From IMG/VR virus record IMGVR_UViG_3300032240_001991, positions 124,001 to 188,000 of that record: a DNA stretch of 64,000 nucleotides; one strand, written 5' to 3'. This document shows, in pieces, positions 19,969 through 53,110 of this stretch. Under the pieces are notes generated by a model. The model was not told the DNA's origin. It ran no database searches and worked only from the letters and a program-made list of their open reading frames with translations. The stretch's first letter is position 1. The number at the start of each line of letters is the position of its first letter. The translations under genes were made by a program, and so were the position numbers.

Positions 19969-21030
19969 TTACTCTCCGCTAAAATACTTTACCCAGATAG
20001 ACTGAGTTTTGTTTGTATACTTATCTAAATTTCTTTGATTAAGGTATACGTTTAGCTGAGGGAACTTGTAGGCAAGATAAATCTTTTCTGCGATCTTATC
20101 GCTGTTCGTAGGATCAGTGTTGAATAGCCAAGTTGACCATGGTATTTCTTTAGATCCTATAATAGGAACCCCTTGGCTGATTAAATCTGCAGACACTATG
20201 TTAAACGTTTCTGAAAAATTACATTGTAATCCAACATCCATAGTACTACATATTTCTAAAAATTCTTCTCTAGGCGCCCATTCATGAATTATTAACTGAT
20301 GTCCTGTTTCTTCAAGATGTTGGAATAGAGCTTTTAAATTATTCATAACAGGGTCGCCTTTCATCTCAACTCTGCCCCCGTTAATATGGAATCTTAATTT
20401 CTTGCCTATTTTGTTAGCAAATTTTAAACTAGCAAAAGCCTGTAGAAGATGATTCTTTAATGGACGAACAGCACCAAAGCAGGCTATGTCTACACAGTCT
20501 TTATACTCAAAATTAAAACTTTTAGTCTTATAGCCTTTTGTGTAAAAGTTAGGCATGTATACTACACGTTCGTTAATCTCAAACGCAGACATTTCTTTCT
20601 TAGTTGAAAGATATTCACGAACCTCATTAAGCATTCTAGGAGCATTTACTCCAATGTCTATATTTGGAAAGTCAATGTAGTCACCTAACCAATCCATAGC
20701 CATTCCTTCGCCGGCCATAAACGGCATTTCGCTATGCAGTCTGATGATCCATCTTACGTTAGGGTGTAATTTACTTAATATTGTAAACTTTGAAGGAACA
20801 ACCCATAGTGCTTCTATTATAACGTGAGTTGGTCGATGTTTGTTCACTAGTCTATCAATACAGTTGTTGTCAATTGCAACTTCAATAGCAGAATTAACTC
20901 CTGCTTGTTGTAACATTTCGTGCATAAAGTTTGCAGAATTAAACAGTCCTGTGCTTAATCCAAGCGGACTATGTTTAACAGGGTTATAATCTTCTCTTCT
21001 CTTGAGAATGAATAAGACTTTCTTAGACAT
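19969..21030 (-). CDS. GT-B fold glycosyltransferase-like protein
   Basis: FGAVRPLKN, SETFNIVSAD; likely start MSKKV at 21030. Confidence 0.7.
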   Translation of the reverse strand: MSKKVLFILKRREDYNPVKHSPLGLSTGLFNSANFMHEMLQQAGVNSAIEVAIDNNCIDRLVNKHRPTHVIIEALWVVPSKFTILSKLHPNVRWIIRLHSEMPFMAGEGMAMDWLGDYIDFPNIDIGVNAPRMLNEVREYLSTKKEMSAFEINERVVYMPNFYTKGYKTKSFNFEYKDCVDIACFGAVRPLKNHLLQAFASLKFANKIGKKLRFHINGGRVEMKGDPVMNNLKALFQHLEETGHQLIIHEWAPREEFLEICSTMDVGLQCNFSETFNIVSADLISQGVPIIGSKEIPWSTWLFNTDPTNSDKIAEKIYLAYKFPQLNVYLNQRNLDKYTNKTQSIWVKYFSGE

Positions 21031-21352
21031 GTTTAGGAATATCCACCTTATCGTTTTTACTTGGAACTTTGACACATATAACTTCACAGTCTTCTAAGAA
21101 AACCGGATTAGTTACTTCCCATGGTTCAATCACAAAGATATCGCCAGTATTTAGTTCTTTACCTTGCATGGTCATCTTCCCTCTGACTAAGAGGTTAATT
21201 TCCGTAACTTCAACATGATAATGATCGCCCCACTCCTGACCTGCAGGATGTAATCGATAATTAACTTCAAAGTCTTTAGTGTAATAAGCTGTTGGTTCAA
21301 ACCCACCAACAAACCACCCAGACTTCATATCACCTAATTTAAATATTTTCAT
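21023..21352 (-). CDS. cupin-domain protein
   Basis: GWFVGGF, HYH...E, GDIF. Confidence 0.75.
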   Translation of the reverse strand: MKIFKLGDMKSGWFVGGFEPTAYYTKDFEVNYRLHPAGQEWGDHYHVEVTEINLLVRGKMTMQGKELNTGDIFVIEPWEVTNPVFLEDCEVICVKVPSKNDKVDIPKHV

Positions 21353-22446
21353 AGCTTATACTTGCTCCAATCTATACTTTGAAATCCTTGATTTGTTATT
21401 ACGTTAACACCAATTGCTCTATCTTTATAAGAGTCATATAGTTTATCGTTAATTAACAATCTCTCACCTGCAGATGCGCCCATAATTAACATGTCCCATG
21501 CTAGGCCAAATTGCCTAAGCTGAGACTCCGTAATGTGTCTTGTACTTTCTTTGCGAGCTGTAACAAAAATTATTTTGTGACCTTGGCTATCCCATTCGTT
21601 AATTTTTTCAACAACTCCGGGCAATATTTCAGGTTCTGCATTTTGAGCATCGCTTATAGTATGCATATGCTTAAGTACTGTTCCGTCAATATCTATAAAC
21701 AATGTTTTGGGTTTTTCTGTATCAAATTCCTTAACCTGCCCAATATAGCGAGATACATCTTGAGGAGTACCTAAAGAAATATAGGCGTTATCATTTAAGT
21801 GATAGGCAAGTATATTTTTATCCTTAAGATGGTTAAAAGTTTCGCTTACATAGCACTCTTTCTTTCCTTGCGCTTTGAAATTCTCTAATAGATCTTTGGC
21901 ACTATTAACAAAGTCTTTTCCGTGCTGCCAATAATGAAAACCTATGAGTGCATGATCTGAGATTGCTTGTTTTTCAACTACACGAAGAACGGTATCTCCG
22001 TACAGATCAGCAAAGCTATTTTTAGGATCTTTACTTTTATAAAGAACTAACGCTGCTCTAGGTTTACTTTTTTTTACAAACTTTAAGAAATCTTCGCCGT
22101 TCCAGTTAATAATCTGATCGCAATTATAAACTACTAGTGGATCATTATTGTCTATATATTTTTCAGCAGCTAATACTGTTTCAGCTGCTCCATTAGTTAC
22201 CTTGTCAAGTTTAATTTCAATTGATTCTGGTCTAAGTTTTTTAAGTAAATGGGTAAGCTGTTTATTATGTTCAGCATCGTCAAACGTGCGTGTTATAAAA
22301 ATAAAACGACCAGGCACATTAAAACTGTTAACACTGTATTCTATTAACGTTTTGTTCAATACTTCAATCAACGGCTTTGGAGTAGTGATGCCGTTTTTAA
22401 AGAATCTGGATCCTGCTCCTGCCATTGGAATTATGATATTCAACAT
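21349..22446 (-). CDS. sugar nucleotidyltransferase-like domain fused to a HAD-like domain
   Basis: PMAGAGSRF, PKPLI, NCDQ, LGTP; C-terminal DIDGT, TAR. Confidence 0.8.
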   Translation of the reverse strand: MLNIIIPMAGAGSRFFKNGITTPKPLIEVLNKTLIEYSVNSFNVPGRFIFITRTFDDAEHNKQLTHLLKKLRPESIEIKLDKVTNGAAETVLAAEKYIDNNDPLVVYNCDQIINWNGEDFLKFVKKSKPRAALVLYKSKDPKNSFADLYGDTVLRVVEKQAISDHALIGFHYWQHGKDFVNSAKDLLENFKAQGKKECYVSETFNHLKDKNILAYHLNDNAYISLGTPQDVSRYIGQVKEFDTEKPKTLFIDIDGTVLKHMHTISDAQNAEPEILPGVVEKINEWDSQGHKIIFVTARKESTRHITESQLRQFGLAWDMLIMGASAGERLLINDKLYDSYKDRAIGVNVITNQGFQSIDWSKYKL

Positions 22447-22457: not shown

Positions 22458-22907
22458 TTATTTCTTGTTTAATTCTTGCTTATATTTTAACACAAAGTCT
22501 GTACAAATACCTTTACAGAAGTCCAAATTATCGTTATGTATTTCAGGCATAACTGCAATGCTATTCTTAATTGGTTGTTTTCCGGGATATGCCCAAAGGT
22601 CACAATGACTGGTAAGAACTACGGTATCATTTTCATGCCAGAAGAAATTAAAATAGTCTGGATCTAACTTACTCATTGCTTCAACGTTTTTGCAATGAAC
22701 CCATAAAGATTGACTCCGTCTTAACAGCCATTCTAATTTTACAGGATATTCAGGGCCATCGTGCCCTAAAAAATAGTTCCCGTCAATCAACCAAAGATCA
22801 ATTTCTACATCATACTTTTTTGATAATGCTTCTTCTATATACTCTGGTCTGTTTTCATATTCTGAATTTGGGCCTTCTAAATTCCCTCTGTGAGCTATTA
22901 GTATCAT
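22458..22907 (-). CDS. glycerophosphodiester phosphodiesterase-like protein
   Basis: IAHRGN, EN, VEID, GHD, HCKN, GICTD. Confidence 0.75.
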   Translation of the reverse strand: MILIAHRGNLEGPNSEYENRPEYIEEALSKKYDVEIDLWLIDGNYFLGHDGPEYPVKLEWLLRRSQSLWVHCKNVEAMSKLDPDYFNFFWHENDTVVLTSHCDLWAYPGKQPIKNSIAVMPEIHNDNLDFCKGICTDFVLKYKQELNKK

Positions 22908-23602
22908 GATTTGTAAACTACTCCTAGTCTAGAAGTAAAAGGCAGCGAAGGGTCGTTGAATAACACCGGCTGTACACCTGTTACTTTAGTAATTCTTTCT
23001 AATACTGGTACGTCATAAACATTTGGAAACATACCTTGAAATAAAATAATATATTTTTCATTTAAAAATGGTAAAAATGATTCAACATCTTTTACTACTT
23101 GTTCTGGAAACTCGCCACCGTCAAGGAAAACATAATCAAGTTTACAATCTGGTCCTAAGGTCTTTCTTAAAATTGTTGCGGTGTCTCGAGGACTCCACCC
23201 AATTTCTGGATAAACGGTATCATGTAATTGAAAATGATCTATTAGGTGTCTAACTGATTGATAGTTAGTAGATTCATGAAACAATGAAGGAAGTGCCCTG
23301 CGATATGATGTGTAACTATTTTGCTGTTCTTCTATGTAAGAATCAATAGTAACTAGCTTCCCATTAGTTTCTTTGAATCCGAGACCTGCTGCAATAGCAC
23401 TAATGCCAAACCCGGTTCCTATTTCTAATCCGCTTTTTAAATTACAAGAAGAAATGATACTCCTTAGTATATCAAATTCAAATTGATTAATTGACCAAGG
23501 AAAATCCTTAGTTGTCAATTTCATTACCTTTGCTAACGGATGAAGGTCATATCGAACTGGGCCGGTGTTTAAATTTAAAATTTCGTTGTAAGGGTGCTGC
23601 AT
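22904..23602 (-). CDS. class I SAM methyltransferase (Methyltransf_24-like)
   Basis: LEIGTGFGIS, DYVFLDG. Confidence 0.75.
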   Translation of the reverse strand: MQHPYNEILNLNTGPVRYDLHPLAKVMKLTTKDFPWSINQFEFDILRSIISSCNLKSGLEIGTGFGISAIAAGLGFKETNGKLVTIDSYIEEQQNSYTSYRRALPSLFHESTNYQSVRHLIDHFQLHDTVYPEIGWSPRDTATILRKTLGPDCKLDYVFLDGGEFPEQVVKDVESFLPFLNEKYIILFQGMFPNVYDVPVLERITKVTGVQPVLFNDPSLPFTSRLGVVYKS

Positions 23603-42083: not shown

Positions 42084-42920
42084 ATGAAAATATACGATTG
42101 TTTTACTTTTTATAACGAGTACGATCTACTAGAAATAAGACTAGAAGAATTGTGGAATACAGTTGATTATTTTGTAATTGGAGAAGCTTCTACTACTTTT
42201 AGAGGGAACCCAAAAAGATTCAACCTAGAAGACAATTGGAGTAGATTTGAAAAATATGCTAGTAAAATTCGATATGTAAGAATAACAGACATGCCAACCG
42301 GGGACAGCAATTGGGCAAGAGAATTCCATCAAAGAGCTGCTCTTGGACGAGGATTGTTTGATATGCAACCTGATGATTTAATTATTGTTAGTGATTGCGA
42401 CGAAATACCTCGAGCAACTGCTGTAGAATATGTCAAAAATGGTCTTGGTGACCACGATCGATATATCATGGCTGTTCCAATTTTTTATTTTAAATTGAAT
42501 AATATAATGACGCATCCGTTGTCTCGACAAATTAATATTAAAATAACAAGAGGAAGAGCATTTACAGATGCTCATCGAGAAAGAGACAGTTGGAATTATA
42601 TTCCAGGAACGATTGAAATTGAACACGGCGGTTGGCACTTTTGTTACTTTGGGGATACTGAATTTGCCCGCACCAAAATACAAAGTTTTTCACATAGCGA
42701 AACAGATGTACCTTGGATAGTAGATAACCTAGATGTAGAAGGCATGGTTGCGGCAGGAAAAGGAATTGGGTGGGATAAAGGAGCAGAAAGATTTGAGCGT
42801 GTTCAAGTTGACGAATACTTCCCAAAGAGTATAACATCCAATATCAACAAATATAAAAACGCCATTGCAGAAGGCGCTACAAGAACAGTTTACGATTTTT
42901 ATCCCAAAGGAAGCAAATAA
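42084..42920 (+). CDS. GT17-family glycosyltransferase
   Basis: YDCFTFYNE, SDCDEIP, GGWHF. Confidence 0.85.
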   Translation: MKIYDCFTFYNEYDLLEIRLEELWNTVDYFVIGEASTTFRGNPKRFNLEDNWSRFEKYASKIRYVRITDMPTGDSNWAREFHQRAALGRGLFDMQPDDLIIVSDCDEIPRATAVEYVKNGLGDHDRYIMAVPIFYFKLNNIMTHPLSRQINIKITRGRAFTDAHRERDSWNYIPGTIEIEHGGWHFCYFGDTEFARTKIQSFSHSETDVPWIVDNLDVEGMVAAGKGIGWDKGAERFERVQVDEYFPKSITSNINKYKNAIAEGATRTVYDFYPKGSK

Positions 42921-43633
42921 TGAGCGATGTAACCTTTTTCCTTACTAGTTGTAAGAGACATGATTTATTAAAGATTTGTTTAGAAAGTTTTGAAGAGTAC
43001 AACACTTATCCAATTGATAGAGCTATTATTATCGAAGATAGTCCGCAAGACATTAGCTGGTGCAAGGATATCCTTAAAAGTATACCTAATGTAGAATTAT
43101 TAAACACAGGCGGCAGACAAGGGCAACTACGCAACATTGACCGATGTTATGCTATGATAGATACTCCTTACGTGTTTCATTGCGAAGATGATTTTCAATT
43201 TACACAAAGTGGGTTTATTGAAGGTAGTAAAACGATTTTGGAAGCTGAACCAACGTGTGTTAATGTATGGTTGCATCCATACGATGCATGTCCAGCTGAG
43301 CACACTTACAAAGAAAAGTTAGAAGTTAACGGAGTAGAATACTACGGGGTTCTTAGCTTAGTTGAGGGAGAAGGGGGGTTGGGATTTACATTCCAACCTA
43401 GCTTACATCGAATAGCAGACTGGAGTCGATGGGGCAACTACAATAGCTTAATAGATCGTATTGCACCTTGGTGTAATAAATTTGATGGTGGACAAGTAGA
43501 GCGCAATATTGCTAGAAATTTTATTATGGAAGGCTATCATTCACGTATCCTTTCTCATCCTGGTAAAATTGGATATTTTGTAAGCACAGGGCATACTAGA
43601 CATGTACCGTTACCTACGCAAGGAGAAATGTAA
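42920..43633 (+). CDS. GT2-like glycosyltransferase
   Basis: TSCKRHDLL, FHCEDD. Confidence 0.7.
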   Translation: MSDVTFFLTSCKRHDLLKICLESFEEYNTYPIDRAIIIEDSPQDISWCKDILKSIPNVELLNTGGRQGQLRNIDRCYAMIDTPYVFHCEDDFQFTQSGFIEGSKTILEAEPTCVNVWLHPYDACPAEHTYKEKLEVNGVEYYGVLSLVEGEGGLGFTFQPSLHRIADWSRWGNYNSLIDRIAPWCNKFDGGQVERNIARNFIMEGYHSRILSHPGKIGYFVSTGHTRHVPLPTQGEM

Positions 43634-44493
43634 TGGCTGGCCGAATTTTTGATTGTTTTCCTTTTTATAATGAATTTGATATTTTAGAAATAAGATTAGA
43701 AGAACTATGGGATACCGTAGACTATTTTGTAATCTCAGAAGCAAATACTACACATCAAAGCAATCCTAAAAACTTTTACCTTAAAGACAATTGGAGTCGT
43801 TTTGAAAAGTATGCCAGTAAAATACGGCATGTTATGGTAGAGGATATGCCTAAGCATTCAGACACCTGGGTAAATGAACGTTTCCAACGGCATGCAATTG
43901 CTAGAGGGCTAACTGATCTTCAGCCAGATGACATCGTGTGTGTTAGCGACTGCGACGAAGTGCCACGCGCAGCGGCACTAGCTGCTATAAGAGACGACAA
44001 TAATGACTATGATCGCTACATCTTAGCAATTCCTCTGCATTACTTTCGATTGAATTACGTAATGACGACTCCTGTGTTCAAACAGAATAACATTATAGTT
44101 ACTAGAGGTAGGGTTTTCACCAATCCTCAAGACGAACGCGCTATTACTTTTAGTACAGGTAATTTACCAATGCATTTTGCTAACGACCAAATTTGTGTCA
44201 TCGAACACGGCGGATGGCATTGGACTTATTTTGGCGATACTGAACACGCAAAAAATAAGATCAGAAACTTTGCGCATGCAGAAACTAATGTACCATGGAT
44301 AATGGACAATCTAGATGTAGACGGAATTGTTAAAGGAAAATACGGTATAGGTTGGGATAAGGGCAATGAACGTTTCGAATATGTTACACTAGACGATTAC
44401 TATCCGCAGTACATCTTAGATAATTTAGAGAAGTATAAGCATATGATAGTAGACGATGCTACTCAATCTGTTTACGACTTTTATCCGGAATAA
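43633..44493 (+). CDS. GT17-family glycosyltransferase
   Basis: FDCFPFYNE, SDCDEVP, GGWHW; close paralogue of 42084. Confidence 0.85.
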   Translation: MAGRIFDCFPFYNEFDILEIRLEELWDTVDYFVISEANTTHQSNPKNFYLKDNWSRFEKYASKIRHVMVEDMPKHSDTWVNERFQRHAIARGLTDLQPDDIVCVSDCDEVPRAAALAAIRDDNNDYDRYILAIPLHYFRLNYVMTTPVFKQNNIIVTRGRVFTNPQDERAITFSTGNLPMHFANDQICVIEHGGWHWTYFGDTEHAKNKIRNFAHAETNVPWIMDNLDVDGIVKGKYGIGWDKGNERFEYVTLDDYYPQYILDNLEKYKHMIVDDATQSVYDFYPE

Positions 44494-44495
44494 TT

Positions 44496-45275
44496 ATGCC
44501 ATCATTTACACATTCCGGCAGTACCGGTGATACATTTAGTAGTTTAGCAGTAGTTAAATGCTTGGGTGGCGGCGACTTTTATCTAAGACTAAATTTTATG
44601 GATAAAGTTGCTCAGCTGATTGGCTGGGGTGGAGCAGGACGACATAGCGGTCGTATGACTCAACAAGACTTTGACTTTTTAGTTCCATTAATGGAAAAGC
44701 AAAGTTATCTAACAAAGTTTGATATCTGGCAAGGTGAACAAGTAGACTACGAACTAGAGAAAGCAGTATTTCATCATAATATCCCTGCATGGCCACGCAA
44801 CTTTGCTAATCAATACGCTACAGCACTAGATTTAGATTTAGAAAAACATTTTAGAACTTTACAAATTGATCCGTATGTTGAAGTAGACAATCCAATATCT
44901 ATACCTGGAAGACCTATTTGTATTTCTAGAAACCAATTCTATCACGAAGGTGAAGAAAATGTTGCTGAAGTTCCTGAGTGGGTTAACTGGATAGAACGTA
45001 ACTTATTAGATCAGGCATTCTTTGTAGGATTACCCGAGGACCGCGATTGGTTTGAAAATACTATGAAAGTTAAGGTACACTATGTTCCAACTAGTGATGC
45101 ACTTGAGCTAGCAAGATTAATTGCAGGATCTAAGATGATGATTGCTAATCAAAGCATGCCGGGCACACTTGCATTGGGAATTGGAACCACATTATGGATT
45201 GAGACTAGAAAAAATACTCCGTTGGATAACAACGAGATTCTTTATCCTTATCGTTCCAACGTGACGTATTTTTAA
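44496..45275 (+). CDS. GT9-like (GT-B) hypothetical protein
   Basis: HSGSTGD, LELARLIAGS...ANQS. Confidence 0.55.
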   Translation: MPSFTHSGSTGDTFSSLAVVKCLGGGDFYLRLNFMDKVAQLIGWGGAGRHSGRMTQQDFDFLVPLMEKQSYLTKFDIWQGEQVDYELEKAVFHHNIPAWPRNFANQYATALDLDLEKHFRTLQIDPYVEVDNPISIPGRPICISRNQFYHEGEENVAEVPEWVNWIERNLLDQAFFVGLPEDRDWFENTMKVKVHYVPTSDALELARLIAGSKMMIANQSMPGTLALGIGTTLWIETRKNTPLDNNEILYPYRSNVTYF

Positions 45276-45323: not shown

Positions 45324-46052
45324 ATGTCAAAACCTAATATTCTTATACCTATGGCAGGATTAGGATCCAGATTCCTGATGAAGGGATTTAGTATCCCAAA
45401 ACCCTTGATTGATATCAATGGTACTCCTATGATTATTAAAGCCATTAGGAGCCTTGGGATAGAAAATGCAACTTACCTATTTGTAATATCAAAAAATGCT
45501 TATACTGAACATATTAAAAAAGAAATATCGGATTCAGTAAATTCTCAATTTATAGAAATTGACTATTTGACAGAAGGCCCTGCTTGTTCAGCTCTTCTTT
45601 TTGAATCACAGATTGATAATGACCAAGAACTTATTGTTGCTAATTGCGATCAGATTATGGAATGGAACGCAGAATCATTTTTGCTTAATGTTCGGCAATA
45701 TGACGGTGCAGTTGTTACATATCATGAAACTACCGATAAAAATAGCTATGCTAGAATTGATGATAGAGGATATGTAGTTAGTATTAAAGAAAAACAGGTA
45801 ATAAGCAACATATCATTAAATGGTGTCCACTATTGGAAAAAAGGTCGCTATTTCGTAGAAAGTGTTAAAAAAATGATTGAGATGGACGATCGAGCACCCA
45901 ACGGCGAATTTTACGTAGGCCCTACTTACAACTACATGATACAAGAAGGTAAAAAGGTAGGAATTTATCATATCCCAAATCAGATGCATCATGCCGTGGG
46001 TGTTCCCGAAGATCTTCAAAAGTATATTAATCACGAGAGAAATAAAAAATGA
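45324..46052 (+). CDS. sugar nucleotidyltransferase-like protein
   Basis: PMAGLGSRF, PKPLI, NCDQ, NGEFYV. Confidence 0.8.
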   Translation: MSKPNILIPMAGLGSRFLMKGFSIPKPLIDINGTPMIIKAIRSLGIENATYLFVISKNAYTEHIKKEISDSVNSQFIEIDYLTEGPACSALLFESQIDNDQELIVANCDQIMEWNAESFLLNVRQYDGAVVTYHETTDKNSYARIDDRGYVVSIKEKQVISNISLNGVHYWKKGRYFVESVKKMIEMDDRAPNGEFYVGPTYNYMIQEGKKVGIYHIPNQMHHAVGVPEDLQKYINHERNKK

Positions 46053-47242
46053 AATTTTTTAGAGATAGATCAGAGATAAAAACTGATCAATATTTTATTG
46101 CTACTTTTCAAATGTCAAGCTCTAAATCACTTAAAGCAGCTGCATGGGATTTAGCTATAGGACAAAGTGTAGGAAATCCTCATGTGAGAAATCGCTGGGA
46201 AAATGATGAGTTGTTTGAAAAGCATAGTTGTATTATTTTAGGTGATGAAAACTATTTAGAAACACTTAAAGCGGGTCTAGTGGAAATTGCGTATCCTGTA
46301 GAAAATACTGATTGGGACACTGACGGTATTTCTCATTTGCTTTGCCAGGTTATGGGAGGTCATGTTGATATTGACATTATTACTAGTTGTCGTTTAGTTA
46401 AACTTGAACTTCCTAGTACTGTTACAAACCATTTCTTTGGCCCTAAATACGGATTTTCTGGAATACGTAAATTAACTGGACAATATAATAAACCACTGTT
46501 TGGCGCAATCATTAAACCTAAAACTGGAATGAGGCCCGAAGTTTTACTAGAAATGGTTAAAGAATTAGTAGACGGCGGTGTTGATTTTATTAAAGAGGAC
46601 GAAATTATGAGTAGTCCTTCTTTTTGTCCATTATATCGTAGAGTAGACTTAATTTCAAATTATCTAGCAAAACAGAGTCGTAAGATCGTATTCTGTCATA
46701 CTATTAATTGCGATCCTCATATACTTATGGATCGTGTAAAAATAATACATCAGCTAGGCGGAACAGGTGTGCATATTAATGTATGGAGCGGATTAGGTTC
46801 TTATAATAGTATTAGAAAATTAGACTTACCTTTATTCCTACATTTTCAAAAGAGTGGTGATAGAACATTTACTGACGCCAGTCATAGATTTAGCATCGCA
46901 TGGCCAGTTATCTGCCAGTTAGCTACACTTATGGGTGTAGACACAATTCAAGCAGGTATGATTGGAGGGTACAGCAACGACGACGAAGTTGAACTAAGGC
47001 AGTCATTGGAAATTTTAAGGAAAGGAAATACCGTTCCTGCATTAAGTTGCGGAATGCATCCTGGGCTAGTTAACCATGTGTCTGATCTTGTTGGTGTAGA
47101 TTTTATGGCCAATGTTGGCGGAGCTGTTCACGGACACCCTGGCGGAACTATTGCAGGGGCACGCGCAATGAGACAGGCAATTGACAAAACTTTTGAATCA
47201 GAGTATCACGAAGCAATTAACAAATGGGGACTAATAAAATGA
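46049..47242 (+). CDS. RuBisCO-like protein (form IV-type)
   Basis: GPKYG..GIR, IIKPKTG, GGVDFIKEDE, SCGMHPG, GGAVHGHPGG..AGARAMRQA. Confidence 0.9.
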   Translation: MKFFRDRSEIKTDQYFIATFQMSSSKSLKAAAWDLAIGQSVGNPHVRNRWENDELFEKHSCIILGDENYLETLKAGLVEIAYPVENTDWDTDGISHLLCQVMGGHVDIDIITSCRLVKLELPSTVTNHFFGPKYGFSGIRKLTGQYNKPLFGAIIKPKTGMRPEVLLEMVKELVDGGVDFIKEDEIMSSPSFCPLYRRVDLISNYLAKQSRKIVFCHTINCDPHILMDRVKIIHQLGGTGVHINVWSGLGSYNSIRKLDLPLFLHFQKSGDRTFTDASHRFSIAWPVICQLATLMGVDTIQAGMIGGYSNDDEVELRQSLEILRKGNTVPALSCGMHPGLVNHVSDLVGVDFMANVGGAVHGHPGGTIAGARAMRQAIDKTFESEYHEAINKWGLIK

Positions 47243-47922
47243 ATCGTATAGAAGACTTACCTTTTAAATTTAATTTTAGAGGAGACTCGCCAACCATTTA
47301 TCAAATGGATGTTAACCAGATGAAATGGAGAGAGGACCTATCCTTTGAAATAAGATTTCACGACGAGAGGGATGATCGAGATTTTCCTTTTCAATGGCCT
47401 GCAAATCCTACAGCTGAAGTTACCGAATGTAACCGATCTGCATTATTAACCAAATTTCTTAAAGTTCGAGATAATGCTAAAGCAATTTTAGAAATAGGTA
47501 TTTGTAGAAATGCAGGAGATTCTTTTACCCATGTTTTTTTAAAGAATAAAAAGCCTGAAACTATATACGTAGGTATTGATTTAGATGATAAAAGTTTTCT
47601 AAATGATCAAAGTAAAAACATACATACAATTCGAGGAACTAGTTCAAGTGTTTTAAAAAACATGAGAACTTGTTACGACCTAGGTATTAAAGAATTTGAT
47701 TTTATTTTTATTGATGGGTGGCATAGCGTAAATCAGGTTTTAATTGATTGGGAATATACTCGTTGGCTATCTAAAGACGGAATAGTTGGATTTCATGACA
47801 CTTCTATGCATCCCGGTCCTCAAAGATTTGTAGCAGCATTAAATCATAATAAATGGAATGTTGAACAAAACGCCTGTTACGAAGATTTTGGAATTGGGTT
47901 TGCTTGGAAAAAATCTAATTAA
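47239..47922 (+). CDS. class I SAM methyltransferase (Methyltransf_24-like)
   Basis: ILEIG, FIDGWHS, GFHDT. Confidence 0.8.
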   Translation: MNRIEDLPFKFNFRGDSPTIYQMDVNQMKWREDLSFEIRFHDERDDRDFPFQWPANPTAEVTECNRSALLTKFLKVRDNAKAILEIGICRNAGDSFTHVFLKNKKPETIYVGIDLDDKSFLNDQSKNIHTIRGTSSSVLKNMRTCYDLGIKEFDFIFIDGWHSVNQVLIDWEYTRWLSKDGIVGFHDTSMHPGPQRFVAALNHNKWNVEQNACYEDFGIGFAWKKSN

Positions 47923-47930: not shown

Positions 47931-48671
47931 ATGAAAACTGCAATGCTACTTTCTGGAATGCCAAGATTTAGTGTAGAATTTGATTCTACACTAGAGTATC
48001 TCGTAAACAGCGATATTGATGTTTATATTGCATTTTGGAAAGAGAACTCTATTAAAGATCCAAAAGTTTCTCCTAATTGGCAGGAAGTAGAAACTGAACA
48101 AGACGTCCGTGATCTAATGGAACCTTATCTGCCAGAAAGATATAAAATTAAGCACGTTGAATTGGTAGATCCTTTTGATTTTTGGGCTACCCCTCAAGAC
48201 TACACTCCAATGAATAGTAGTCCCTTTAATACATGGCAGCAATATAATATTTTAAAAATCTGCGATCAACGTCGTAAAGAAAGTGGTATTATATATGACC
48301 TAGTGATACGAGGTCGGCCCGATGTAGGTATTGACCATTATCTTGATTTATCTTTGATTTTAGATATTTTAAAAAAGAACCCAACAACAATTATTACTCC
48401 GGATAATTATAGATGCGGATATCCTCCAGAGGGATTTTGTGATCAGTTTGCTATTGGATTGCCTCTCACTATGACTACGTATTGCGAAGCTGTATACTAT
48501 TACGATGAATTGTATAATCAAGGAATTTTTTATAATCCTGAATGTTTATTACAATCAGTACTTGATAGGCATGGAATTATATATCCTAAAGCTAGCTTTG
48601 AAGTTAAAAGAGGCGGATACTGGCAACCTATAGAACACGGAAGATGGGCTGAATTAAAAATAAAAAGGTAA
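47931..48671 (+). CDS. putative glycosyltransferase-like protein, SGxPR family
   Basis: MKTAMLLSGMPRF...YDLVIRGRPD...DQFAIG...PE. Confidence 0.6.
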   Translation: MKTAMLLSGMPRFSVEFDSTLEYLVNSDIDVYIAFWKENSIKDPKVSPNWQEVETEQDVRDLMEPYLPERYKIKHVELVDPFDFWATPQDYTPMNSSPFNTWQQYNILKICDQRRKESGIIYDLVIRGRPDVGIDHYLDLSLILDILKKNPTTIITPDNYRCGYPPEGFCDQFAIGLPLTMTTYCEAVYYYDELYNQGIFYNPECLLQSVLDRHGIIYPKASFEVKRGGYWQPIEHGRWAELKIKR

Positions 48672-48680: not shown

Positions 48681-49493
48681 ATGAAAACTGCAATGATACT
48701 TTCGGGATTTCCTCGATTTAATGAATACTTTGATCTTAATTTTCAAAGTTTGCTAAACAGCGACTTTGAGTGGTACATAGTTTTATGGAAGGGCGACTAT
48801 TCTAATGACGTTAAAATTCCAGCTAACTGGTCAGCTGTTAGAGATGAGCAAGATGCCCGAGATCTTTTAGAACCAAATTTTCCTGCTAACCATAAAATAA
48901 AACATTTAGAATTAGTAGATATAGAAACTTGCCCTCCTATGCCAAGAGAAAAGTATGAAAATGTCTGCTACCATCCTATATCTGCGGTATGGGGACAACA
49001 TGTGTTATTAAAAAAATGTGGTGAAGCTTTAGAAAGATCTGATACAGAATACGATCTAGTTATAAGAACAAGAAGCGATATTGGCATCGATAAAACTTTA
49101 AATCTAGAGATGGTAGTAAAATATTTAAAAGATTACTCAAATGTGTTATTGACCCCCGACACTCATAGATACGGCCATTGGTGGAATCCAGATGCTCCGT
49201 TTCCTTTCTGTGATCAATTTGCGATGGGACTTTACAACGTTATGTTAAAATATTGTAAACAGGTAGACCTTTACGAAAGTTTATACGACAAAGGAGTTCC
49301 GTATGGCCCAGAAATGATGGCGGCGTCGGCTATGCGAGAATATGGATTTGCATGGCCGTATACCGGATTTAATTTAATGAGAAATCACGAATGGTGGGAC
49401 GACGGACTTCGTGTTGACGATGCCAGGTACGCTCCTTTTGGTAAATGGGCTGAAACAACAGTTAAAAGATTAGTTGACAACGAAGATAAATAA
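48681..49493 (+). CDS. putative glycosyltransferase-like protein, SGxPR family
   Basis: tandem paralogue: SGFPRF, YDLVIRTRSD, DQFAMG. Confidence 0.6.
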   Translation: MKTAMILSGFPRFNEYFDLNFQSLLNSDFEWYIVLWKGDYSNDVKIPANWSAVRDEQDARDLLEPNFPANHKIKHLELVDIETCPPMPREKYENVCYHPISAVWGQHVLLKKCGEALERSDTEYDLVIRTRSDIGIDKTLNLEMVVKYLKDYSNVLLTPDTHRYGHWWNPDAPFPFCDQFAMGLYNVMLKYCKQVDLYESLYDKGVPYGPEMMAASAMREYGFAWPYTGFNLMRNHEWWDDGLRVDDARYAPFGKWAETTVKRLVDNEDK

Positions 49494-50194: not shown

Positions 50195-50278
50195 GGGTAG
50201 CGAGTAGCATTGGCGACTACAGCTGATTGTAAATCAGCCGCTTTGGCATACGGGGTTCGACTCCCTGGCTACCCACCA
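50195..50278 (+). tRNA. tRNA-Tyr(GTA)
   Basis: GGGTAGC/GCTACCC acceptor, GCTGA-TTGTAAA-TCAGC, long variable arm, TTCGA, CCA. Confidence 0.9.
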
Positions 50279-50363
50279 GTCACGTGAACTGTGATGTGTA
50301 ACACAGTATAATCAAACACGGCAGGATTGGCAATGACCTGCTAAAATAAGCATGCTAGATGGT

Positions 50364-50438
50364 AGACATATGGTGTAACGGTAGCACGCACCCAATTTTT
50401 GGGCGCGCCGAGGTGAAGGTTCAACTCCTTCTATGTCG
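50364..50438 (+). ncRNA. tRNA-like element or degenerate tRNA
   Basis: GACATA/TATGTC acceptor, D-arm GTGT..GCAC, T-arm GAAGG-TTCAACT-CCTTC, abnormal anticodon arm, no CCA. Confidence 0.6.
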
Positions 50439-50473
50439 TGCGGATAACCATCAAATAAAAAACCGCACTTTTT
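50438..50473 (+). terminator. putative terminator
   Basis: GTGCGG/CCGCAC stem with a large loop then TTTTT. Confidence 0.5.
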
Positions 50474-50493
50474 AAAAAATAAATATAGAAATT

Positions 50494-51600
50494 ATGATAC
50501 TATTATCTAACGTTAAAATTACTAATATTCCACTTTATCCTTCTCCTAATAGACATTTACTTCGAGGTAAACTTTTTACTAATCCAGACAGAATGGATAT
50601 TTGGAAATATACGTTAGCAAGTTACGTTCCTTTAATGCCCCTCATAAGCAAAGTTATACTTTATATTGATCTAGCCACAACTGAATATGCAGGTCAGGAG
50701 CCCTTATTAGAGACTTATATAAGATCATTATTTCCAGAAGATAAATTGATTCTTCGCTGGTATAGAAACAACAGTACCGCAGATTGGCGTAGATCGTGTG
50801 AAGAAGATGTTTTTCCAATAGACGATGACTTAATCTTCAATCTAACAAACGATGATCATGTTTTTATTGATAAAAATTTAGATATCTTAAATGCGACTAT
50901 AAACCATTTGACTAGGTGTGAAGATCCTTATGCGCAAATTATCTATAGCCATTGGCCAGAAGTTATACGACACGCAGCTAATAACGGATTTCAAATTTCA
51001 GAAGATTTAACATGTGTTTATGGCAGGTTTCGTTCTATTGAAAGTTTTGATATAGTTAAAAAAGAAAGATGGCGACACTACTGGTTTGACCATGACTTTG
51101 GAGAGGCTAATAATGTTTTTCGACCAGATGAACATTTATGTGTTGCCGGAACTTTGCCACATGGTTCAACAGTTTTTTTTCCAATACGTGAATTGTCTAG
51201 GCACTTTGACGGATACGAATATGCTGGTGCTTTTATGAATTTAGCACCTCCATTAGATATTCCTCAAGGTTTCTTTGAAAAAAATATCAAAATAGCATAC
51301 GGCTATTCTGATCTTAAAGAAGGTTATACCAATATAAATCCATCATATCCTTACTTTAAAGCATCTACTGGAATTGGAATGGATTATAGATTTTCTTTAG
51401 AAGATATTCCTGCTGCATGGTTTGATAGAATTAGCGAAATAAGTATAAACCCTAACGCCGACTTAGAATATTTAAAAAAGTGTCGTGATCAACTTTATTA
51501 CGATATGGCGTGCGCCGATGCGCGAGGTCCGCATGTACAAGCAGTGACACATCCTTTCCCAAAAGAAATATTTAAAAATCAATTTTTATCAAAACAATAG
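50494..51600 (+). CDS. hypothetical protein (possible GT-A fold)
   Basis: 368 aa ORF, NDDH motif, TAAATA box upstream. Confidence 0.7.
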   Translation: MILLSNVKITNIPLYPSPNRHLLRGKLFTNPDRMDIWKYTLASYVPLMPLISKVILYIDLATTEYAGQEPLLETYIRSLFPEDKLILRWYRNNSTADWRRSCEEDVFPIDDDLIFNLTNDDHVFIDKNLDILNATINHLTRCEDPYAQIIYSHWPEVIRHAANNGFQISEDLTCVYGRFRSIESFDIVKKERWRHYWFDHDFGEANNVFRPDEHLCVAGTLPHGSTVFFPIRELSRHFDGYEYAGAFMNLAPPLDIPQGFFEKNIKIAYGYSDLKEGYTNINPSYPYFKASTGIGMDYRFSLEDIPAAWFDRISEISINPNADLEYLKKCRDQLYYDMACADARGPHVQAVTHPFPKEIFKNQFLSKQ

Positions 51601-51605
51601 TTTAT

Positions 51606-51681
<76 letters not shown>

Positions 51682-51685
51682 ATTT

Positions 51686-51759
51686 GCCCAATTAGCTCAA
51701 AAGTAGAGCGCACGACTGATAATCGTAAGACGGAGGAGCGTTACCTCCATTGGGCACCA
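51686..51759 (+). tRNA. tRNA-Ile(GAT)
   Basis: ACGA-CTGATAA-TCGT, atypical T-loop AGCGTTA, CCA. Confidence 0.85.
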
Positions 51760-51765
51760 ATTTAT

Positions 51766-51840
51766 GGGTCTGTAACTCAGAGGCAGAGTAGCCGCCTCTT
51801 AAGCGGTAAGTCGAGATTTCAAAATTCTCCAGACCCACCA
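51766..51840 (+). tRNA. tRNA-Lys(CTT)
   Basis: GCCGC-CTCTTAA-GCGGT, CCA. Confidence 0.9.
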
Positions 51841-51843
51841 ATT

Positions 51844-52575
51844 TTACCAATTGCCAAAATTACCAATACCTATGTTGTAGTTAAATTGACTATCTGGTGT
51901 TTGAATGTTGTTTTTTAATAAGTGCCATCCTAGCATACTTTCAGCGGTAATAGGGATTCCTTCTAGAGTATATTGATCAATGTAATCAAACACACTAGCA
52001 TATTTGCTCATTGTATGGCTTTCGCCAATAGCAAAATTATCGTTCACCGGATTTAAAGTTTGTCCTATGGGTACAAATCCTAATCTGCCATTTGACGGCA
52101 TAATTAAAGATTCCATAGACTGTTGCTGTAGCCATTCTTTTGCTCGATCTAAATAAATGTCTCGATCAATGGTACCGTCGGCTCTGCTGCGTATTACTAA
52201 ATCATATGCTCCAAAGATAGATTCGTATTTTTCTCTTATTTGATTTACAGATTTAATTCCATTATACATGGTCCAAACATTCTTTGGATTAGCAATGTCC
52301 ATTACATGATAGCATTTGTTACTATCAAACACTGGCATATTGACTATATCTAGGCTAGCTATAAAATGATTGTTTGGTAAACAGGATACTAACATTTGAT
52401 ATAGAGTTGATCGATCATTATTCCATTTTGGAGAAATTCTATTGTCGTGCTGGTGACTAGAACTCCATAAATAGAAGAACCAATCTACCTGATTATAATT
52501 TTTTAAATGACCTATTAAAGAATTAAAATTTTCTGTAAATCGAGGAAGTCCAGAAACTATGATTGCAACTTTCAT
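51844..52575 (-). CDS. putative glycosyltransferase-like protein, SGxPR family
   Basis: MKVAIIVSGLPRF, YDLVIRSRAD, NDNFAIG. Confidence 0.6.
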   Translation of the reverse strand: MKVAIIVSGLPRFTENFNSLIGHLKNYNQVDWFFYLWSSSHQHDNRISPKWNNDRSTLYQMLVSCLPNNHFIASLDIVNMPVFDSNKCYHVMDIANPKNVWTMYNGIKSVNQIREKYESIFGAYDLVIRSRADGTIDRDIYLDRAKEWLQQQSMESLIMPSNGRLGFVPIGQTLNPVNDNFAIGESHTMSKYASVFDYIDQYTLEGIPITAESMLGWHLLKNNIQTPDSQFNYNIGIGNFGNW

Positions 52576-53107: not shown

Positions 53108-53110
53108 TTT

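What the first reader, a model, noticed from the sequence alone, without database searches (positions are those of the whole stretch)
45324..47922. RuBisCO-like protein embedded in a phage glycan operon
Seen: a 397-aa RLP translationally coupled to a nucleotidyltransferase-like gene upstream and a methyltransferase downstream. It keeps KPK and the carbamylation motif DFIKEDE. By eye it has LHFQKS for LHxHRA, DTIQAG for DHIHAG and GGYS where loop-6 Lys normally sits. Known: form IV RLPs perform enolase, isomerase or transcarboxylase chemistry on sugar phosphates. Inference: a biosynthetic RLP making an unusual, possibly branched, sugar phosphate that the neighbour then activates. That would be an unusual role and setting for the fold.
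Basis: partly seen in the sequence, partly recalled or inferred. Interest (0 to 1): 0.75.

Follow-up and report, generated by a model that had tools for sequence, protein, structure and literature searches.

The report
Phage RuBisCO-like enzyme in sugar-activation cassette
A jumbo phage carries a non-carboxylating RuBisCO relative that, across hundreds of phage and some bacterial genomes, travels with a sugar-nucleotide-forming enzyme, a small sugar-phosphate-isomerase-like cupin and a mini-phosphodiesterase, which suggests the RuBisCO fold has been put to use building an unusual sugar for a glycan.

Summary
ORF 46049-47242 encodes a 397-aa RuBisCO-like protein (Pfam 1.4e-35; AF2 model TM 0.9 to type III RuBisCO). 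It overlaps a nucleotidyltransferase (NT) gene upstream by ATGA, and probably a methyltransferase gene downstream in the same way. The record is a 326-kb phage with a roughly 30-kb glycan island.

The protein belongs to a large monophyletic clade (SH-aLRT 100) that is separate from MtnW and from true RuBisCOs. This is the phage "Form IV-like" group reported by Jaffe et al. 2019, with no function assigned. In 205 members, K175, K177, K201, D203, E204 and the P1 phosphate site are invariant. H294 is always Gln and K334 is always Tyr, so enolisation chemistry is kept and carboxylation is lost.

What appears to be new is the gene context. In 80 viral loci the clade sits in a cassette of NT, small PMI-like cupin, RLP, methyltransferase and mini-GDPD, usually beside GT-A-like transferases. 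The NT is present in 76 of 80 loci. The trio persists down to 33% RLP identity, in CPR MAGs and in a Verrucomicrobiae chromosome. In this window the cupin and mini-GDPD lie 24 kb away.

Best reading (about 0.5): a ketose-phosphate epimerase or isomerase feeding a nucleotide-sugar pathway. The reaction is untested, and nothing supports a branched product.

The parts
46049..47242 (+). RuBisCO-like protein (397 aa), a member of the phage 'Form IV-like' clade. It keeps the Mg/carbamate site and the P1 phosphate site; H294 is Gln and K334 is Tyr.
   Evidence: Pfam 1.4e-35; PDB and NCBIfam scores; AF2 model with pLDDT 95.8 and TMq 0.89-0.90 to type III RuBisCO; residue table; tree.
45324..46052 (+). 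Sugar-phosphate nucleotidyltransferase-like protein (242 aa, phrog_3980), the ortholog of the cassette NT. Its stop overlaps the RLP start (ATGA).
   Evidence: Homologs are found in 76 of 80 viral loci.
47224..47922 (+). Methyltransf_24 class I SAM methyltransferase. The probable start is ATG 47239, which overlaps the RLP stop.
   Evidence: Orthologs occur in 33 of 80 loci, and some methyltransferase occurs in 54 of 80.
47931..48671 (+). GT-A-like putative glycosyltransferase (phrog_13607; similar to DUF7796 and WavE).
   Evidence: Cluster u246 is present in 30 of the 81 loci clustered (80 viral loci plus the window).
48681..49493 (+). Paralog of the GT-A-like protein (phrog_13607).
51844..52575 (-). 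Third paralog of the GT-A-like protein (cluster u246).
42084..44493 (+). Three glycosyltransferase genes (GT17, GT2, GT17) at the head of the same + strand gene string.
44496..45275 (+). 259-aa protein of unknown function, just upstream of the NT.
   Evidence: No Pfam, NCBIfam or PHROG hit. Homologs are found in only 2 viral loci.
21023..21352 (-). Small cupin (109 aa, phrog_24762). In most relatives this partner is encoded between the NT and the RLP; here it is displaced by 24 kb.
   Evidence: tblastn 1.9e-38; alignment A1 with invariant H44, H46, E51; AF2 model and Foldseek hits to mini phosphomannose isomerases and the ManC cupin domain.
21349..22446 (-). NT-HAD (IIIB phosphatase-like) fusion, a paralog of the cassette NT (35% identity), flanked by the cupin and the mini-GDPD.
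22458..22907 (-). Mini-GDPD-like protein (149 aa, phrog_34507). In most relatives this partner is encoded just downstream of the RLP; here it is displaced.
   Evidence: tblastn 1.7e-54; alignment A2 with invariant H6, R7, G8, E18, N19, E35, D37, H49; PDB GDPD 7e0v at 1.5e-4; atlas structure TM 0.79 to GDPD clusters.
22904..23602 (-). Second Methyltransf_24 methyltransferase, adjacent to the displaced mini-GDPD.

Best explanation
The gene encodes an active, non-carboxylating member of the RuBisCO superfamily. It uses the conserved Mg2+/carbamyl-lysine centre to enolise a mono-phosphorylated keto-sugar and re-protonate it, acting as a ketose-phosphate epimerase or isomerase. It works in one pathway with three co-inherited partners. 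The small cupin resembles phosphomannose isomerases and would interconvert ketose and aldose phosphates. The sugar-phosphate nucleotidyltransferase would make the NDP-sugar. The mini-GDPD phosphoesterase has an unclear step: it may trim phosphate, or it may act at the transfer stage. The activated rare sugar would then be O- or C-methylated and transferred by the adjacent GT-A-like transferases into a glycan made during infection. What is shown: the fold; retention of the enolisation and P1-phosphate residues; loss of carboxylation residues; clade separateness; and the conserved gene cassette in a glycan context. What is inferred: the reaction type, the order of steps, the substrate and the destination of the sugar.
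For: 1. Active site. Across 205 family members K175, K177, K201, D203, E204, S379, G381 and G403 are invariant. H294 is always Gln and K334 is always Tyr. The N-domain residues E60, T65, W66 and N123 are replaced by an equally invariant G, N, P, G set. Seventy positions are at least 97% conserved. This is the pattern of a working enzyme with its own chemistry. From established RuBisCO enzymology (my own knowledge), Lys334 mutants still enolise substrate but cannot carboxylate.

2. Phosphate sites. The distal P2 site is variable: position 295 is K, S or R; 327 is Q or H; 298 is D or A. The P1 site is fixed. That fits a monophosphate substrate.

3. Gene linkage in viral loci. The NT is present in 76 of 80 viral loci, mostly within 0-350 bp upstream on the same strand. 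The cupin is in 53 loci and the mini-GDPD in 57. A methyltransferase is in 54. At least one methyltransferase, GT-like gene or 4,6-dehydratase is in 71 of 80.

4. Linkage at depth. It holds at 33-41% RLP identity: RLP-cupin-NT in L095; RLP-cupin-NT-GT2-GT2 in L097; GDPD-RLP-cupin-NT in L100, confirmed by hhalign at 1.5e-36 and 7e-31. It also holds in CPR MAGs and in a 2.28-Mb Verrucomicrobiae chromosome, where only RLP-NT-cupin (no mini-GDPD) sits among ordinary cellular genes.

5. One natural RLP-NT fusion protein exists, P0123.

6. Cupin identity. Its closest structures are the mini phosphomannose isomerases 7zvm and 7zvy and the C-terminal PMI cupin domain of ManC/XanB-type mannose-1-P guanylyltransferases. 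NT plus cupin therefore mimics a split ManC.

7. NT paralogs. Two other NT paralogs in this window are fused to HAD domains, one of them HAD_2-type, the Pfam family that includes beta-phosphoglucomutase. In that paralog a possible mutase domain occupies the position that the RLP occupies beside the cassette NT.

8. Earliest branch. The earliest-branching family member, P0133, has the same active-site signature. It lies in a cellular sugar-catabolic locus next to a cupin-type sugar-phosphate isomerase (PF06560), an FGGY ketose/sugar kinase and a split transketolase. That again places the enzyme on ketose phosphates.
Against: No biochemical data exist for any member of the clade. The cassette has no obvious phosphomutase to turn an aldose-6-P into the aldose-1-P that a sugar-1-P NT would need, so a step is missing or mis-assigned. 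The role of the mini-GDPD is unexplained. The cupin is absent from 27 of 80 loci, so it is not obligatory. In this very genome the cupin and mini-GDPD are not next to the RLP but flank a different NT paralog, which weakens the idea that all four act on one substrate. The RLP-NT fusion was seen on a single 2.5-kb contig. The GDPD-RLP 'fusion' (P0156) lies on a contig where the RLP is split and may be an artefact. The predicted RLP-NT complex gave no answer. The cupin of the catabolic locus L098 is not detectably orthologous to the cassette cupin.
Confidence: 0.5

Rival explanations
1. The RLP acts after the nucleotidyltransferase, on a nucleotide-linked keto-sugar such as an NDP-4-keto-6-deoxyhexose from the frequently neighbouring 4,6-dehydratase. 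It would serve as a Mg-dependent enolase, epimerase or ketoisomerase, with the P1 site binding the diphosphate.
For: NDP-hexose 4,6-dehydratases are present in 25 of 80 loci, and C-methyltransferases typical of NDP-ketosugar tailoring occur nearby. In the single fusion the domain order is RLP then NT, which does not fix the order of reactions. The variable distal pocket could accommodate a bulky group.
Against: To my knowledge, every characterised member of the RuBisCO superfamily acts on small sugar mono- or bis-phosphates in a closed active site. The minimal RLP-NT-cupin unit in the Verrucomicrobiae chromosome has no dehydratase. The catabolic relative P0133 has no NT at all.
Confidence: 0.15
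2. The RLP performs carbon-carbon bond chemistry on a sugar-acid or keto-sugar phosphate, such as decarboxylation, transcarboxylation or a rearrangement, as the apiose-pathway RLPs OiaX and OiaC do. This would give a branched or chain-shortened sugar phosphate that is then activated. It is the first reader's 'branched sugar' version.
For: OiaX is the third-best NCBIfam model (153 bits). The earliest-branching relative sits beside a split transketolase and an FGGY kinase, which recalls apiose/apulose catabolism (from my own memory of Carter et al. 2018, not checked here). The wider island in this window makes other branched or extended sugars, with a ThDP enzyme, an RfbH-like protein and a C-methyltransferase.
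Against: The OiaX score is far below its cut-off of 700. H294 and K334, which in RuBisCO handle the carboxylated intermediate, are both replaced throughout the family. No gene in the cassette makes a sugar acid.
Confidence: 0.12
3. The RLP is a salvage or catabolic enzyme, either methionine-salvage-like (MtnW enolase or the R. rubrum-type 1,3-isomerase with its cupin partner) or another host-metabolism takeover function. On this view its adjacency to glycan genes is incidental.
For: An RLP plus a small cupin recalls the MtnW/MtnD pairing and the R. rubrum RLP/cupin methylsulfurylase pairing (from my own knowledge). The phage encodes many SAM-dependent methyltransferases. P0133 is in a catabolic locus.
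Against: The family is separate from the MtnW clade and falls below all MtnW model cut-offs. No IF-2B-type MtnA/R15P isomerase is present in the 326-kb record. Tight linkage to an NT (76 of 80 loci) and to GT-like genes is not expected for a salvage enzyme. The profile of the cupin alignment matched no solved methionine-salvage cupin at E<=1.
Confidence: 0.08
4. It is a genuine but divergent RuBisCO (form III-like) that fixes CO2 onto RuBP in a nucleotide-salvage pathway.
For: The best NCBIfam model and the best structural matches are type III RuBisCO. K175, K177, K201, D203 and E204 are intact.
Against: The rubisco_III score is 181 bits against a cut-off of 497. H294Q and K334Y are invariant, and E60, T65, W66 and N123 are all replaced. 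No PRK and no IF-2B-type R15P isomerase were found in the record.
Confidence: 0.02

Closest known systems
Phage 'Form IV-like' RuBisCO-like proteins (Jaffe et al. 2019, Mol Biol Evol 36:435; PMC6389311)
   Same: They are divergent RLPs on large phage (myovirus-like) contigs from many environments. They group with Beckwithbacteria (CPR) sequences, lie outside the classical RLP clades, and lack some catalytic residues. My data reproduce this: there is a Beckwithbacteria MAG homolog at 50% identity (L087), the clade is monophyletic, and the gene sits on a phage with a terminase.
   Different: That paper left the function open. Its main text does not mention a nucleotidyltransferase or glycosyl context. 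The invariant Q294/Y334 signature, the NT-cupin-RLP-MT-GDPD cassette and the catabolic early-branching relative are additions from this analysis. I could not compare directly with their sequences.
Type III RuBisCO (e.g. Thermococcus kodakarensis, PDB 3a12/3a13; 8dht)
   Same: It is the closest solved fold (TMq 0.89-0.90) and the best sequence hit (1.8e-38). The KPK motif, carbamyl-Lys, Asp, Glu and the P1 glycine loops are the same.
   Different: Identity is only about 25%. H294Q, K334Y, and the E60, T65, W66 and N123 replacements apply. No AMP-pathway partner genes are present. The NCBIfam score is 181 against a cut-off of 497.
MtnW/YkrW 2,3-diketo-5-methylthiopentyl-1-phosphate enolase (PDB 2oem, 4nas)
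   Same: It is an RLP that uses the same metal centre for enolisation of a keto-sugar monophosphate, and it is of similar length (about 400 aa). TMq is 0.84-0.85.
   Different: It forms a separate clade. Scores of 148 and 118 bits fall below cut-offs of 409 and 513. The residue signature differs: the MtnW clade shows K-V-K-D-E-H-P-L-S at the positions where this family shows K-K-K-D-E-Q-K-Q/H-Y. Its context is salvage, not glycan.
Bifunctional type II PMI-GMP enzymes (ManC/XanB/AlgA-type mannose-1-phosphate guanylyltransferase / mannose-6-phosphate isomerase)
   Same: An N-terminal nucleotidyltransferase plus a C-terminal cupin isomerase act in one NDP-sugar pathway. The cassette's NT and small cupin reproduce this pair as separate genes.
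   Different: The similarity is only structural or very distant (12-20% identity for the cupin). There is no evidence for mannose. An RLP is inserted between the two genes, which has no counterpart in GDP-mannose synthesis.
Apiose-pathway RLPs OiaX/OiaC (3-oxo-isoapionate-4-phosphate decarboxylase / transcarboxylase-hydrolase)
   Same: They are RLPs acting on sugar-derived monophosphates outside sulfur metabolism. OiaX is the third-best NCBIfam model.
   Different: The score is 153 bits against a cut-off of 700. Those enzymes are catabolic and have no NT partner.

Membership tests
RuBisCO large-subunit superfamily | Match to the catalytic-domain model above its curated threshold | tested here: met
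   PF00016 scores 123.4 bits against a cut-off of 30.1, E 1.4e-35.
RuBisCO large-subunit superfamily | N-terminal alpha/beta domain plus C-terminal TIM barrel fold | tested here: met
   AF2 model has pLDDT 95.8. Foldseek gives TMq 0.89-0.90 to type III RuBisCO over the full length.
RuBisCO large-subunit superfamily | Carbamylatable Lys201 with Asp203 and Glu204 as metal ligands, plus K175 and K177 | tested here: met
   K182, D184, E185, K156 and K158 are present in the window protein and invariant in 205 family members. Carbamylation itself is not testable here.
Bona fide RuBisCO (forms I-III) | Complete catalytic set including H294, K334, N123 and E60 | tested here: not met
   The replacements are H294Q, K334Y, N123G, E60G, T65N and W66P.
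Bona fide RuBisCO (forms I-III) | Score above the NCBIfam equivalog thresholds | tested here: not met
   rubisco_III scores 181 against 497; PRK04208 scores 169 against 438; PRK13475 scores 95 against 489.
Bona fide RuBisCO (forms I-III) | RuBP carboxylase activity | not testable with these tools
   This needs an enzyme assay.
MtnW/YkrW DK-MTP-1-P enolase | Score above the equivalog thresholds | tested here: not met
   PRK09549 scores 148 against 409; TIGR03332 scores 118 against 513.
MtnW/YkrW DK-MTP-1-P enolase | Placement inside the MtnW clade | tested here: not met
   The family is a separate group with SH-aLRT 100. The clade holding Fictibacillus MtnW (P0241) lies inside a different 40-row clade.
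MtnW/YkrW DK-MTP-1-P enolase | Methionine-salvage gene context (MtnA, MtnK, MtnX, MtnD and others) | tested here: not met
   No IF-2B/MtnA match in the 326-kb record. The neighbours are NT, methyltransferase and GT genes. The record may be incomplete.
OiaX 3-oxo-isoapionate-4-P decarboxylase | Score above the equivalog threshold | tested here: not met
   153 bits against 700.
Phage 'Form IV-like' RLP clade (Jaffe et al. 2019) | Encoded on phage genomes | tested here: met
   The window lies in an IMG/VR virus record with a large terminase. 184 viral contigs encode relatives.
Phage 'Form IV-like' RLP clade (Jaffe et al. 2019) | Groups with Beckwithbacteria sequences and lies outside the other RLP clades | tested here: met
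   A Beckwithbacteria MAG homolog is 50% identical and has the same neighbours. The family is monophyletic and apart from all other retrieved superfamily members.
Sugar-phosphate nucleotidyltransferase (the neighbour, 45324-46052) | GxG(T/S)R(L/F) signature and NDP-sugar pyrophosphorylase fold-family match | tested here: met
   The motif MAGLGSRF is present. PDB 4evw matches at 3.4e-14 over residues 6-235. RmlA_long and Arch_glmU match at about 1e-11 but far below their cut-offs. Pfam NTP_transf_3 scores 25 against 27.
Sugar-phosphate nucleotidyltransferase (the neighbour, 45324-46052) | Substrate and nucleotide specificity | not testable with these tools
   No equivalog threshold was met.
Cupin-type phosphosugar isomerase (partner, 21023-21352) | Cupin barrel with an HxH...E metal motif; closest structures are PMIs | tested here: met
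   H44, H46 and E51 are invariant. The best Foldseek hits are 7zvm and 7zvy and the ManC C-terminal domains, TM 0.60-0.67. The isomerase activity is inferred only.
GDPD phosphodiesterase (partner, 22458-22907) | HR(G), E-N, E-x-D and H catalytic and metal motifs on a GDPD-like barrel | tested here: inconclusive
   The motifs are invariant. PDB 7e0v matches at 1.5e-4, over the first about 50 residues only. The atlas structure has TM 0.79 to GDPD clusters. The protein is only about 148 aa against about 230 for GDPD, and there was no Pfam hit.

The most novel reading that the evidence does not exclude
The RLP is the committed enzyme of a previously undescribed nucleotide-sugar pathway. That would be the first biosynthetic (anabolic) role for the RuBisCO fold. 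In this reading, a compact mobile cassette (NT, PMI-like cupin, RLP, methyltransferase, mini-GDPD, GT-A-like transferase) turns a central ketose phosphate into a rare, methylated sugar. Aquatic jumbo phages and some CPR bacteria would install that sugar on a glycan, whether on the virion or the infected-cell surface. The cassette would have been recruited from a cellular catabolic RLP-cupin pair.
Probability: 0.4. Interest if true: 0.85.

Novelty: new variant of a known kind. Interest (0 to 1): 0.66.

Why it matters
All characterised RuBisCO-like proteins work in salvage or catabolism: methionine salvage, the MTA-isoprenoid shunt and apiose degradation. A clade that is tied to a nucleotidyltransferase and glycosyltransferases would extend the fold's repertoire to nucleotide-sugar biosynthesis. 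It would also give a function to what Jaffe et al. called an under-appreciated reservoir of RuBisCO diversity; here that is 184 viral contigs in IMG/VR and more than 120 clusters at 90% identity. The invariant H294Q/K334Y signature on an otherwise intact enolisation site makes the chemistry directly testable. The cassette is small enough to express as a unit. It could also reveal a new rare sugar, and show how large phages decorate themselves or their hosts.

Tried and rejected
1. Searches of the INPHARED phage collection by DNA and by protein found nothing. All relatives came from metagenomic collections.

2. Complex prediction for RLP plus NT returned 'no answer' (score 0.00, controls not run). 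It counts neither for nor against binding.

3. I looked for Rosetta-stone fusions.
   - The RLP-NT fusion (P0123) is real as a called gene but was seen on one 2.5-kb contig only.
   - The GDPD-RLP 'fusion' (P0156) sits on a contig where the RLP is split into two ORFs, so I do not rely on it.
   - One GDPD-GT-like fusion was seen in L072.
   - The IF-2B-RuBisCO fusions (P0157, P0162) belong to the full-site AMP-pathway clade, not to this family.

4. I tested whether the cassette cupin matches the cupin in the catabolic locus L098. hhalign gave E 0.11, so no orthology can be claimed.

5. I considered a bisphosphate substrate because the 50%-identity representatives keep K/R295 and H327. The deeper 205-sequence alignment shows position 295 as K, S or R and position 327 as Q or H, so I dropped that idea in favour of a monophosphate.

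6. PRK and IF-2B were sought in the whole 326-kb record and not found.

7. A search of public sequencing runs found only the source metagenome and no RNA run, so expression could not be checked and read laying was not used.

8. Seven full-text literature searches and three papers found no functional assignment and no mention of the NT link.

9. The position of the family relative to the other forms is unresolved. The tree was a quick LG+G4 search on 110 rows, rooted at the midpoint, with only one named reference (MtnW). Forms I and II and the DeepYkrW and Photo clades were not individually labelled.


Full report
**Observation**

The middle one is a 397-aa protein that matches Pfam RuBisCO_large at 1.4e-35. 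Each quoted motif is present in the translation. The HMMER alignment to solved RuBisCOs and my own alignments confirm that they correspond to K175/K177, K201/D203/E204, H294 (Gln), R295 (Lys), H327 (Gln) and K334 (Tyr).

The NT stop and the RLP start share ATGA at 46049-46052. The RLP stop overlaps an in-frame ATG of the methyltransferase ORF at 47239. Both junctions therefore look translationally coupled.

The upstream product carries the nucleotidyltransferase signature MAGLGSRF. It matches an NDP-sugar pyrophosphorylase structure (4evw, 3.4e-14) and phrog_3980 (5e-63). The downstream product is a Methyltransf_24 enzyme.

**The genome**

The window is bases 124001-188000 of a 326,658-bp IMG/VR virus record. 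That record encodes a large terminase and, within the window, eight tRNAs. No record in the INPHARED phage collection resembles it.

The RLP sits in the + strand arm of a roughly 30-kb glycan island.
- The + strand carries GT17, GT2, GT17, an unknown ORF, NT, RLP, MT and two GT-A-like genes.
- The divergent - strand arm (about 20-42 kb) carries an RfbH-type 3-dehydrase, a ThDP enzyme, a DmpG/DmpF pair, 4,6-dehydratases, C- and O-methyltransferases, and three more NT paralogs fused to HAD or kinase domains.

**What family the RLP belongs to**

No curated equivalog model is satisfied: rubisco_III scores 181 against 497, OiaX 153 against 700, and MtnW 148 against 409. An AlphaFold model (pLDDT 95.8) superposes best on type III RuBisCOs (TMq 0.89-0.90, 25% identity), ahead of MtnW (0.85).

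The word-indexed search returned more than 120 clusters at 72-78% identity. IMG/VR holds 184 contigs with a relative. The exhaustive search of 50%-identity representatives gave about 21 full-length family representatives at 32-60% identity, then a drop to unrelated superfamily members at 32% or less.

In a tree of 110 rows the family is one group with SH-aLRT 100. The clade containing a named Fictibacillus MtnW lies elsewhere, and so does the clade with a complete RuBisCO active site, which includes the IF-2B fusions.

This is evidently the phage 'Form IV-like' group that Jaffe et al. (2019) described as about 80 phage sequences plus Beckwithbacteria, with function unclear. I also recover a Beckwithbacteria MAG homolog (L087).

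**Active-site signature**

In 205 non-identical members the pattern is as follows.
- Invariant: K175, K177, K201, D203, E204, S379, G381 and G403.
- H294 is always Gln and K334 is always Tyr.
- E60, T65, W66 and N123 are replaced by an equally invariant G, N, P, G set, within a conserved GQSxGNP loop.
- The distal (P2) phosphate site varies: position 295 is K, S or R; 327 is Q or H; 298 is D or A.
- Seventy positions are at least 97% conserved.

The metal/carbamate enolisation centre and the P1 phosphate cup are therefore under strong selection, while the residues specific to carboxylation are gone.

**Conserved partners**

ORF clustering of 80 viral loci, each with 6 kb of flank on either side, gave these counts.

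| Partner | Loci (of 80) | Note |
|---|---|---|
| Nucleotidyltransferase | 76 | By tblastn; two of the four without it are cut off by a contig end; nearly always just upstream on the same strand |
| Mini-GDPD-like protein, about 148 aa | 57 | No Pfam hit |
| Cupin, about 107 aa | 53 | No Pfam hit |
| Any methyltransferase | 54 | |
| At least one MT, GT-like gene or NDP-hexose 4,6-dehydratase | 71 | |

The usual gene order is NT, cupin, RLP, (MT), GDPD. Where the cupin is missing, a GT-A-like gene often follows the RLP.

The window genome does have the cupin (21023-21352, - strand) and the mini-GDPD (22458-22907, - strand). They lie 24 kb from the RLP, flanking an NT-HAD fusion and next to a second Methyltransf_24 gene. 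The cassette is therefore split here.

The association holds deep in the family.
- RLP-cupin-NT at 33% identity (L095).
- RLP-x-cupin-NT-GT2-GT2 at 34% identity (L097).
- GDPD-RLP-cupin-NT at 41% identity (L100), with the small proteins confirmed by profile comparison.

It also holds outside obvious phages.
- Patescibacteria and Beckwithbacteria MAGs carry NT, GDPD, cupin and RLP among GT2 and MT genes.
- A 2.28-Mb Verrucomicrobiae chromosome carries only RLP-NT-cupin, between ordinary cellular genes.

One natural RLP-NT fusion protein exists (P0123), on a single short contig.

**What the partners are**

- The cupin has invariant H44, H46 and E51. Its model (pLDDT 93) is closest to the roughly 110-aa phosphomannose isomerases of Thermococcus, to KdgF, and to the C-terminal PMI cupin domain of ManC/XanB-type mannose-1-phosphate guanylyltransferases. 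NT plus cupin is therefore architecturally a split ManC-type enzyme.
- The mini-GDPD keeps the HRG, EN, ExD and GHD motifs. It matches a GDPD structure over its first 50 residues or so and GDPD clusters by predicted structure (TM 0.79).
- The recurrent unknown proteins of about 245 aa are GT-A-like, resembling DUF7796 and WavE.
- The NT's weak best models are all sugar-1-phosphate nucleotidyltransferases: RmlA-long, archaeal GlmU, AglF and HddC.

**An informative outlier**

The earliest-branching member, P0133, is 42% identical and has the same K-K-K-D-E-Q-R-H-Y-S-G-G-G signature. It lies in a cellular sugar-utilisation locus containing a GntR regulator, an FGGY kinase (XylB/GntK-like), a split transketolase, a PF06560 cupin-type sugar-phosphate isomerase immediately upstream, a glycoside hydrolase and an ABC sugar transporter. 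There is no NT. This independently puts the enzyme next to a cupin isomerase and among ketose-phosphate enzymes. That cupin, however, is not detectably orthologous to the cassette cupin.

**Mechanism proposed**

What is shown:
- a conserved, evidently functional RuBisCO-fold enzyme that keeps the enolisation centre and one phosphate site but not the carboxylation residues;
- obligate-looking genomic coupling to a sugar-phosphate NT;
- frequent coupling to a PMI-like cupin, a mini-GDPD, methyltransferases and GT-like proteins.

What is inferred: the RLP abstracts the proton alpha to the carbonyl of a ketose monophosphate and re-protonates the enediolate, with the invariant Tyr334 as a plausible second acid/base. 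This would give an epimer or positional isomer. The cupin would interconvert ketose and aldose phosphate. The NT would form the NDP-sugar. Methylation and transfer would follow.

In one HAD-NT paralog in this window, the HAD domain is of the Pfam family that includes beta-phosphoglucomutase, and it sits where the RLP sits beside the cassette NT. This fits the idea that the RLP supplies the NT's substrate.

The weak points are the missing mutase step, the unexplained role of the mini-GDPD, the optional cupin, and the split arrangement in this genome. I put this reading at about 0.5.

**Rivals**

- Action on NDP-ketosugars after the NT (0.15).
- C-C bond chemistry giving a branched or shortened sugar, in the OiaX/OiaC style (0.12).
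- A salvage or catabolic role unrelated to the glycan (0.08).
- True carboxylation (0.02).

Evidence for and against each is given in the rival entries.

**Novelty**

Phage RLPs as a clade are already known (PMC6389311). I did not find the following reported in seven full-text searches and three papers read:
- the invariant Q294/Y334 signature;
- the conserved NT-cupin-RLP-MT-GDPD cassette in glycan contexts;
- its presence in cellular chromosomes;
- the catabolic early-branching relative.

I therefore class the finding as a new variant of a known kind: a known but uncharacterised RLP clade with a probable biosynthetic role that would be new for the fold.

**Limits**

- There are no experimental data.
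- The tree has one named reference and an unresolved backbone.
- The viral loci are biased towards close relatives of the window.
- The fusions are single observations.
- The complex prediction was uninformative.
- No RNA data were found.

Noticed in passing
window 36198-41353 (- strand): A gene string consists of a DmpG-like 4-hydroxy-2-oxovalerate aldolase (36198-37232), a DmpF-like acylating acetaldehyde dehydrogenase (37229-38101; PDB 7z3s 1.7e-79), an acetolactate-synthase-like ThDP enzyme (38098-39933) and an RfbH-type CDP-6-deoxy-4-keto-hexose 3-dehydrase (39938-41353; 447 bits, above the cut-off of 423). It looks like a pathway for a 3,6-dideoxy sugar carrying a two-carbon branch (yersiniose-like, from memory). 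An aldolase/dehydrogenase pair inside a phage glycan island is unusual.
   Followed up: partly
window 21349-22446, 25155-26534, 30839-32419 (- strand): Three further nucleotidyltransferase genes. Two are paralogs of the cassette NT (35-39% identity): one is fused to a HAD-IIIB phosphatase-like domain and one to a HAD_2 domain (the family that includes beta-phosphoglucomutase). The third, fused to an APH-type kinase domain, matches the cassette NT family only weakly. The phage seems to encode several parallel sugar-activation modules.
   Followed up: partly
window 873-3350 (+ strand): There is an NMN adenylyltransferase/Nudix-like gene (phrog_395, cytidyltransferase plus MutT/NUDIX) followed by a nicotinamide phosphoribosyltransferase gene (phrog_448, 1.8e-166). 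Together they form an NAD+ salvage or reconstitution pair of the kind phages use against NAD-depleting defences.
   Followed up: no
window 50195-53502: A cluster of eight tRNA genes (Tyr, Lys-UUU, Phe, Lys-CUU, Thr, His, Arg, Ser) is interspersed with small ORFs directly downstream of the RLP operon.
   Followed up: no
window 27284-30837 (- strand): This stretch holds a GatZ/KbaZ-like (tagatose-bisphosphate aldolase subunit-like) protein, a small HAD-like protein, an unknown 328-aa protein, and an NDP-hexose C-methyltransferase-like protein (Methyltransf_23 plus Methyltransf_14).
   Followed up: no
protein P0198 (database; not in the window): A 583-aa protein fuses an N-terminal TIR domain to an RLP with a K-R-F-D-E-C-R-H-K signature (the carbamyl-Lys is replaced). 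It belongs to a different RLP clade and may be defence-related.
   Followed up: no
L098:855-10453 (NCBI MAG GCA_023488455.1): A cellular catabolic locus contains the earliest-branching family member (P0133) next to a PF06560 cupin isomerase, a split transketolase, an FGGY kinase, a glycoside hydrolase and an ABC sugar transporter. The sugar it degrades is unknown, and identifying it could reveal the family's substrate.
   Followed up: partly
L072:7933-9003: A 356-aa ORF fuses the mini-GDPD domain (residues 2-158) to the GT-A-like u246 domain (143-354). This hints that the mini-GDPD may act at the transfer stage. It is a single observation.
   Followed up: no
L083 (contig of a Pelagibacteraceae single-cell assembly, AG-343-D15): A 6.3-kb contig carries NT-RLP, with its RLP 70% and its NT 75% identical to those of viral loci. 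It may come from a phage infecting that cell and could point to a host for part of the clade.
   Followed up: no
window about 20000 and about 42000: GC skew changes sign at both points, coinciding with the switches of coding strand (+ to about 20 kb, - from 20 to 42 kb, + thereafter).
   Followed up: no
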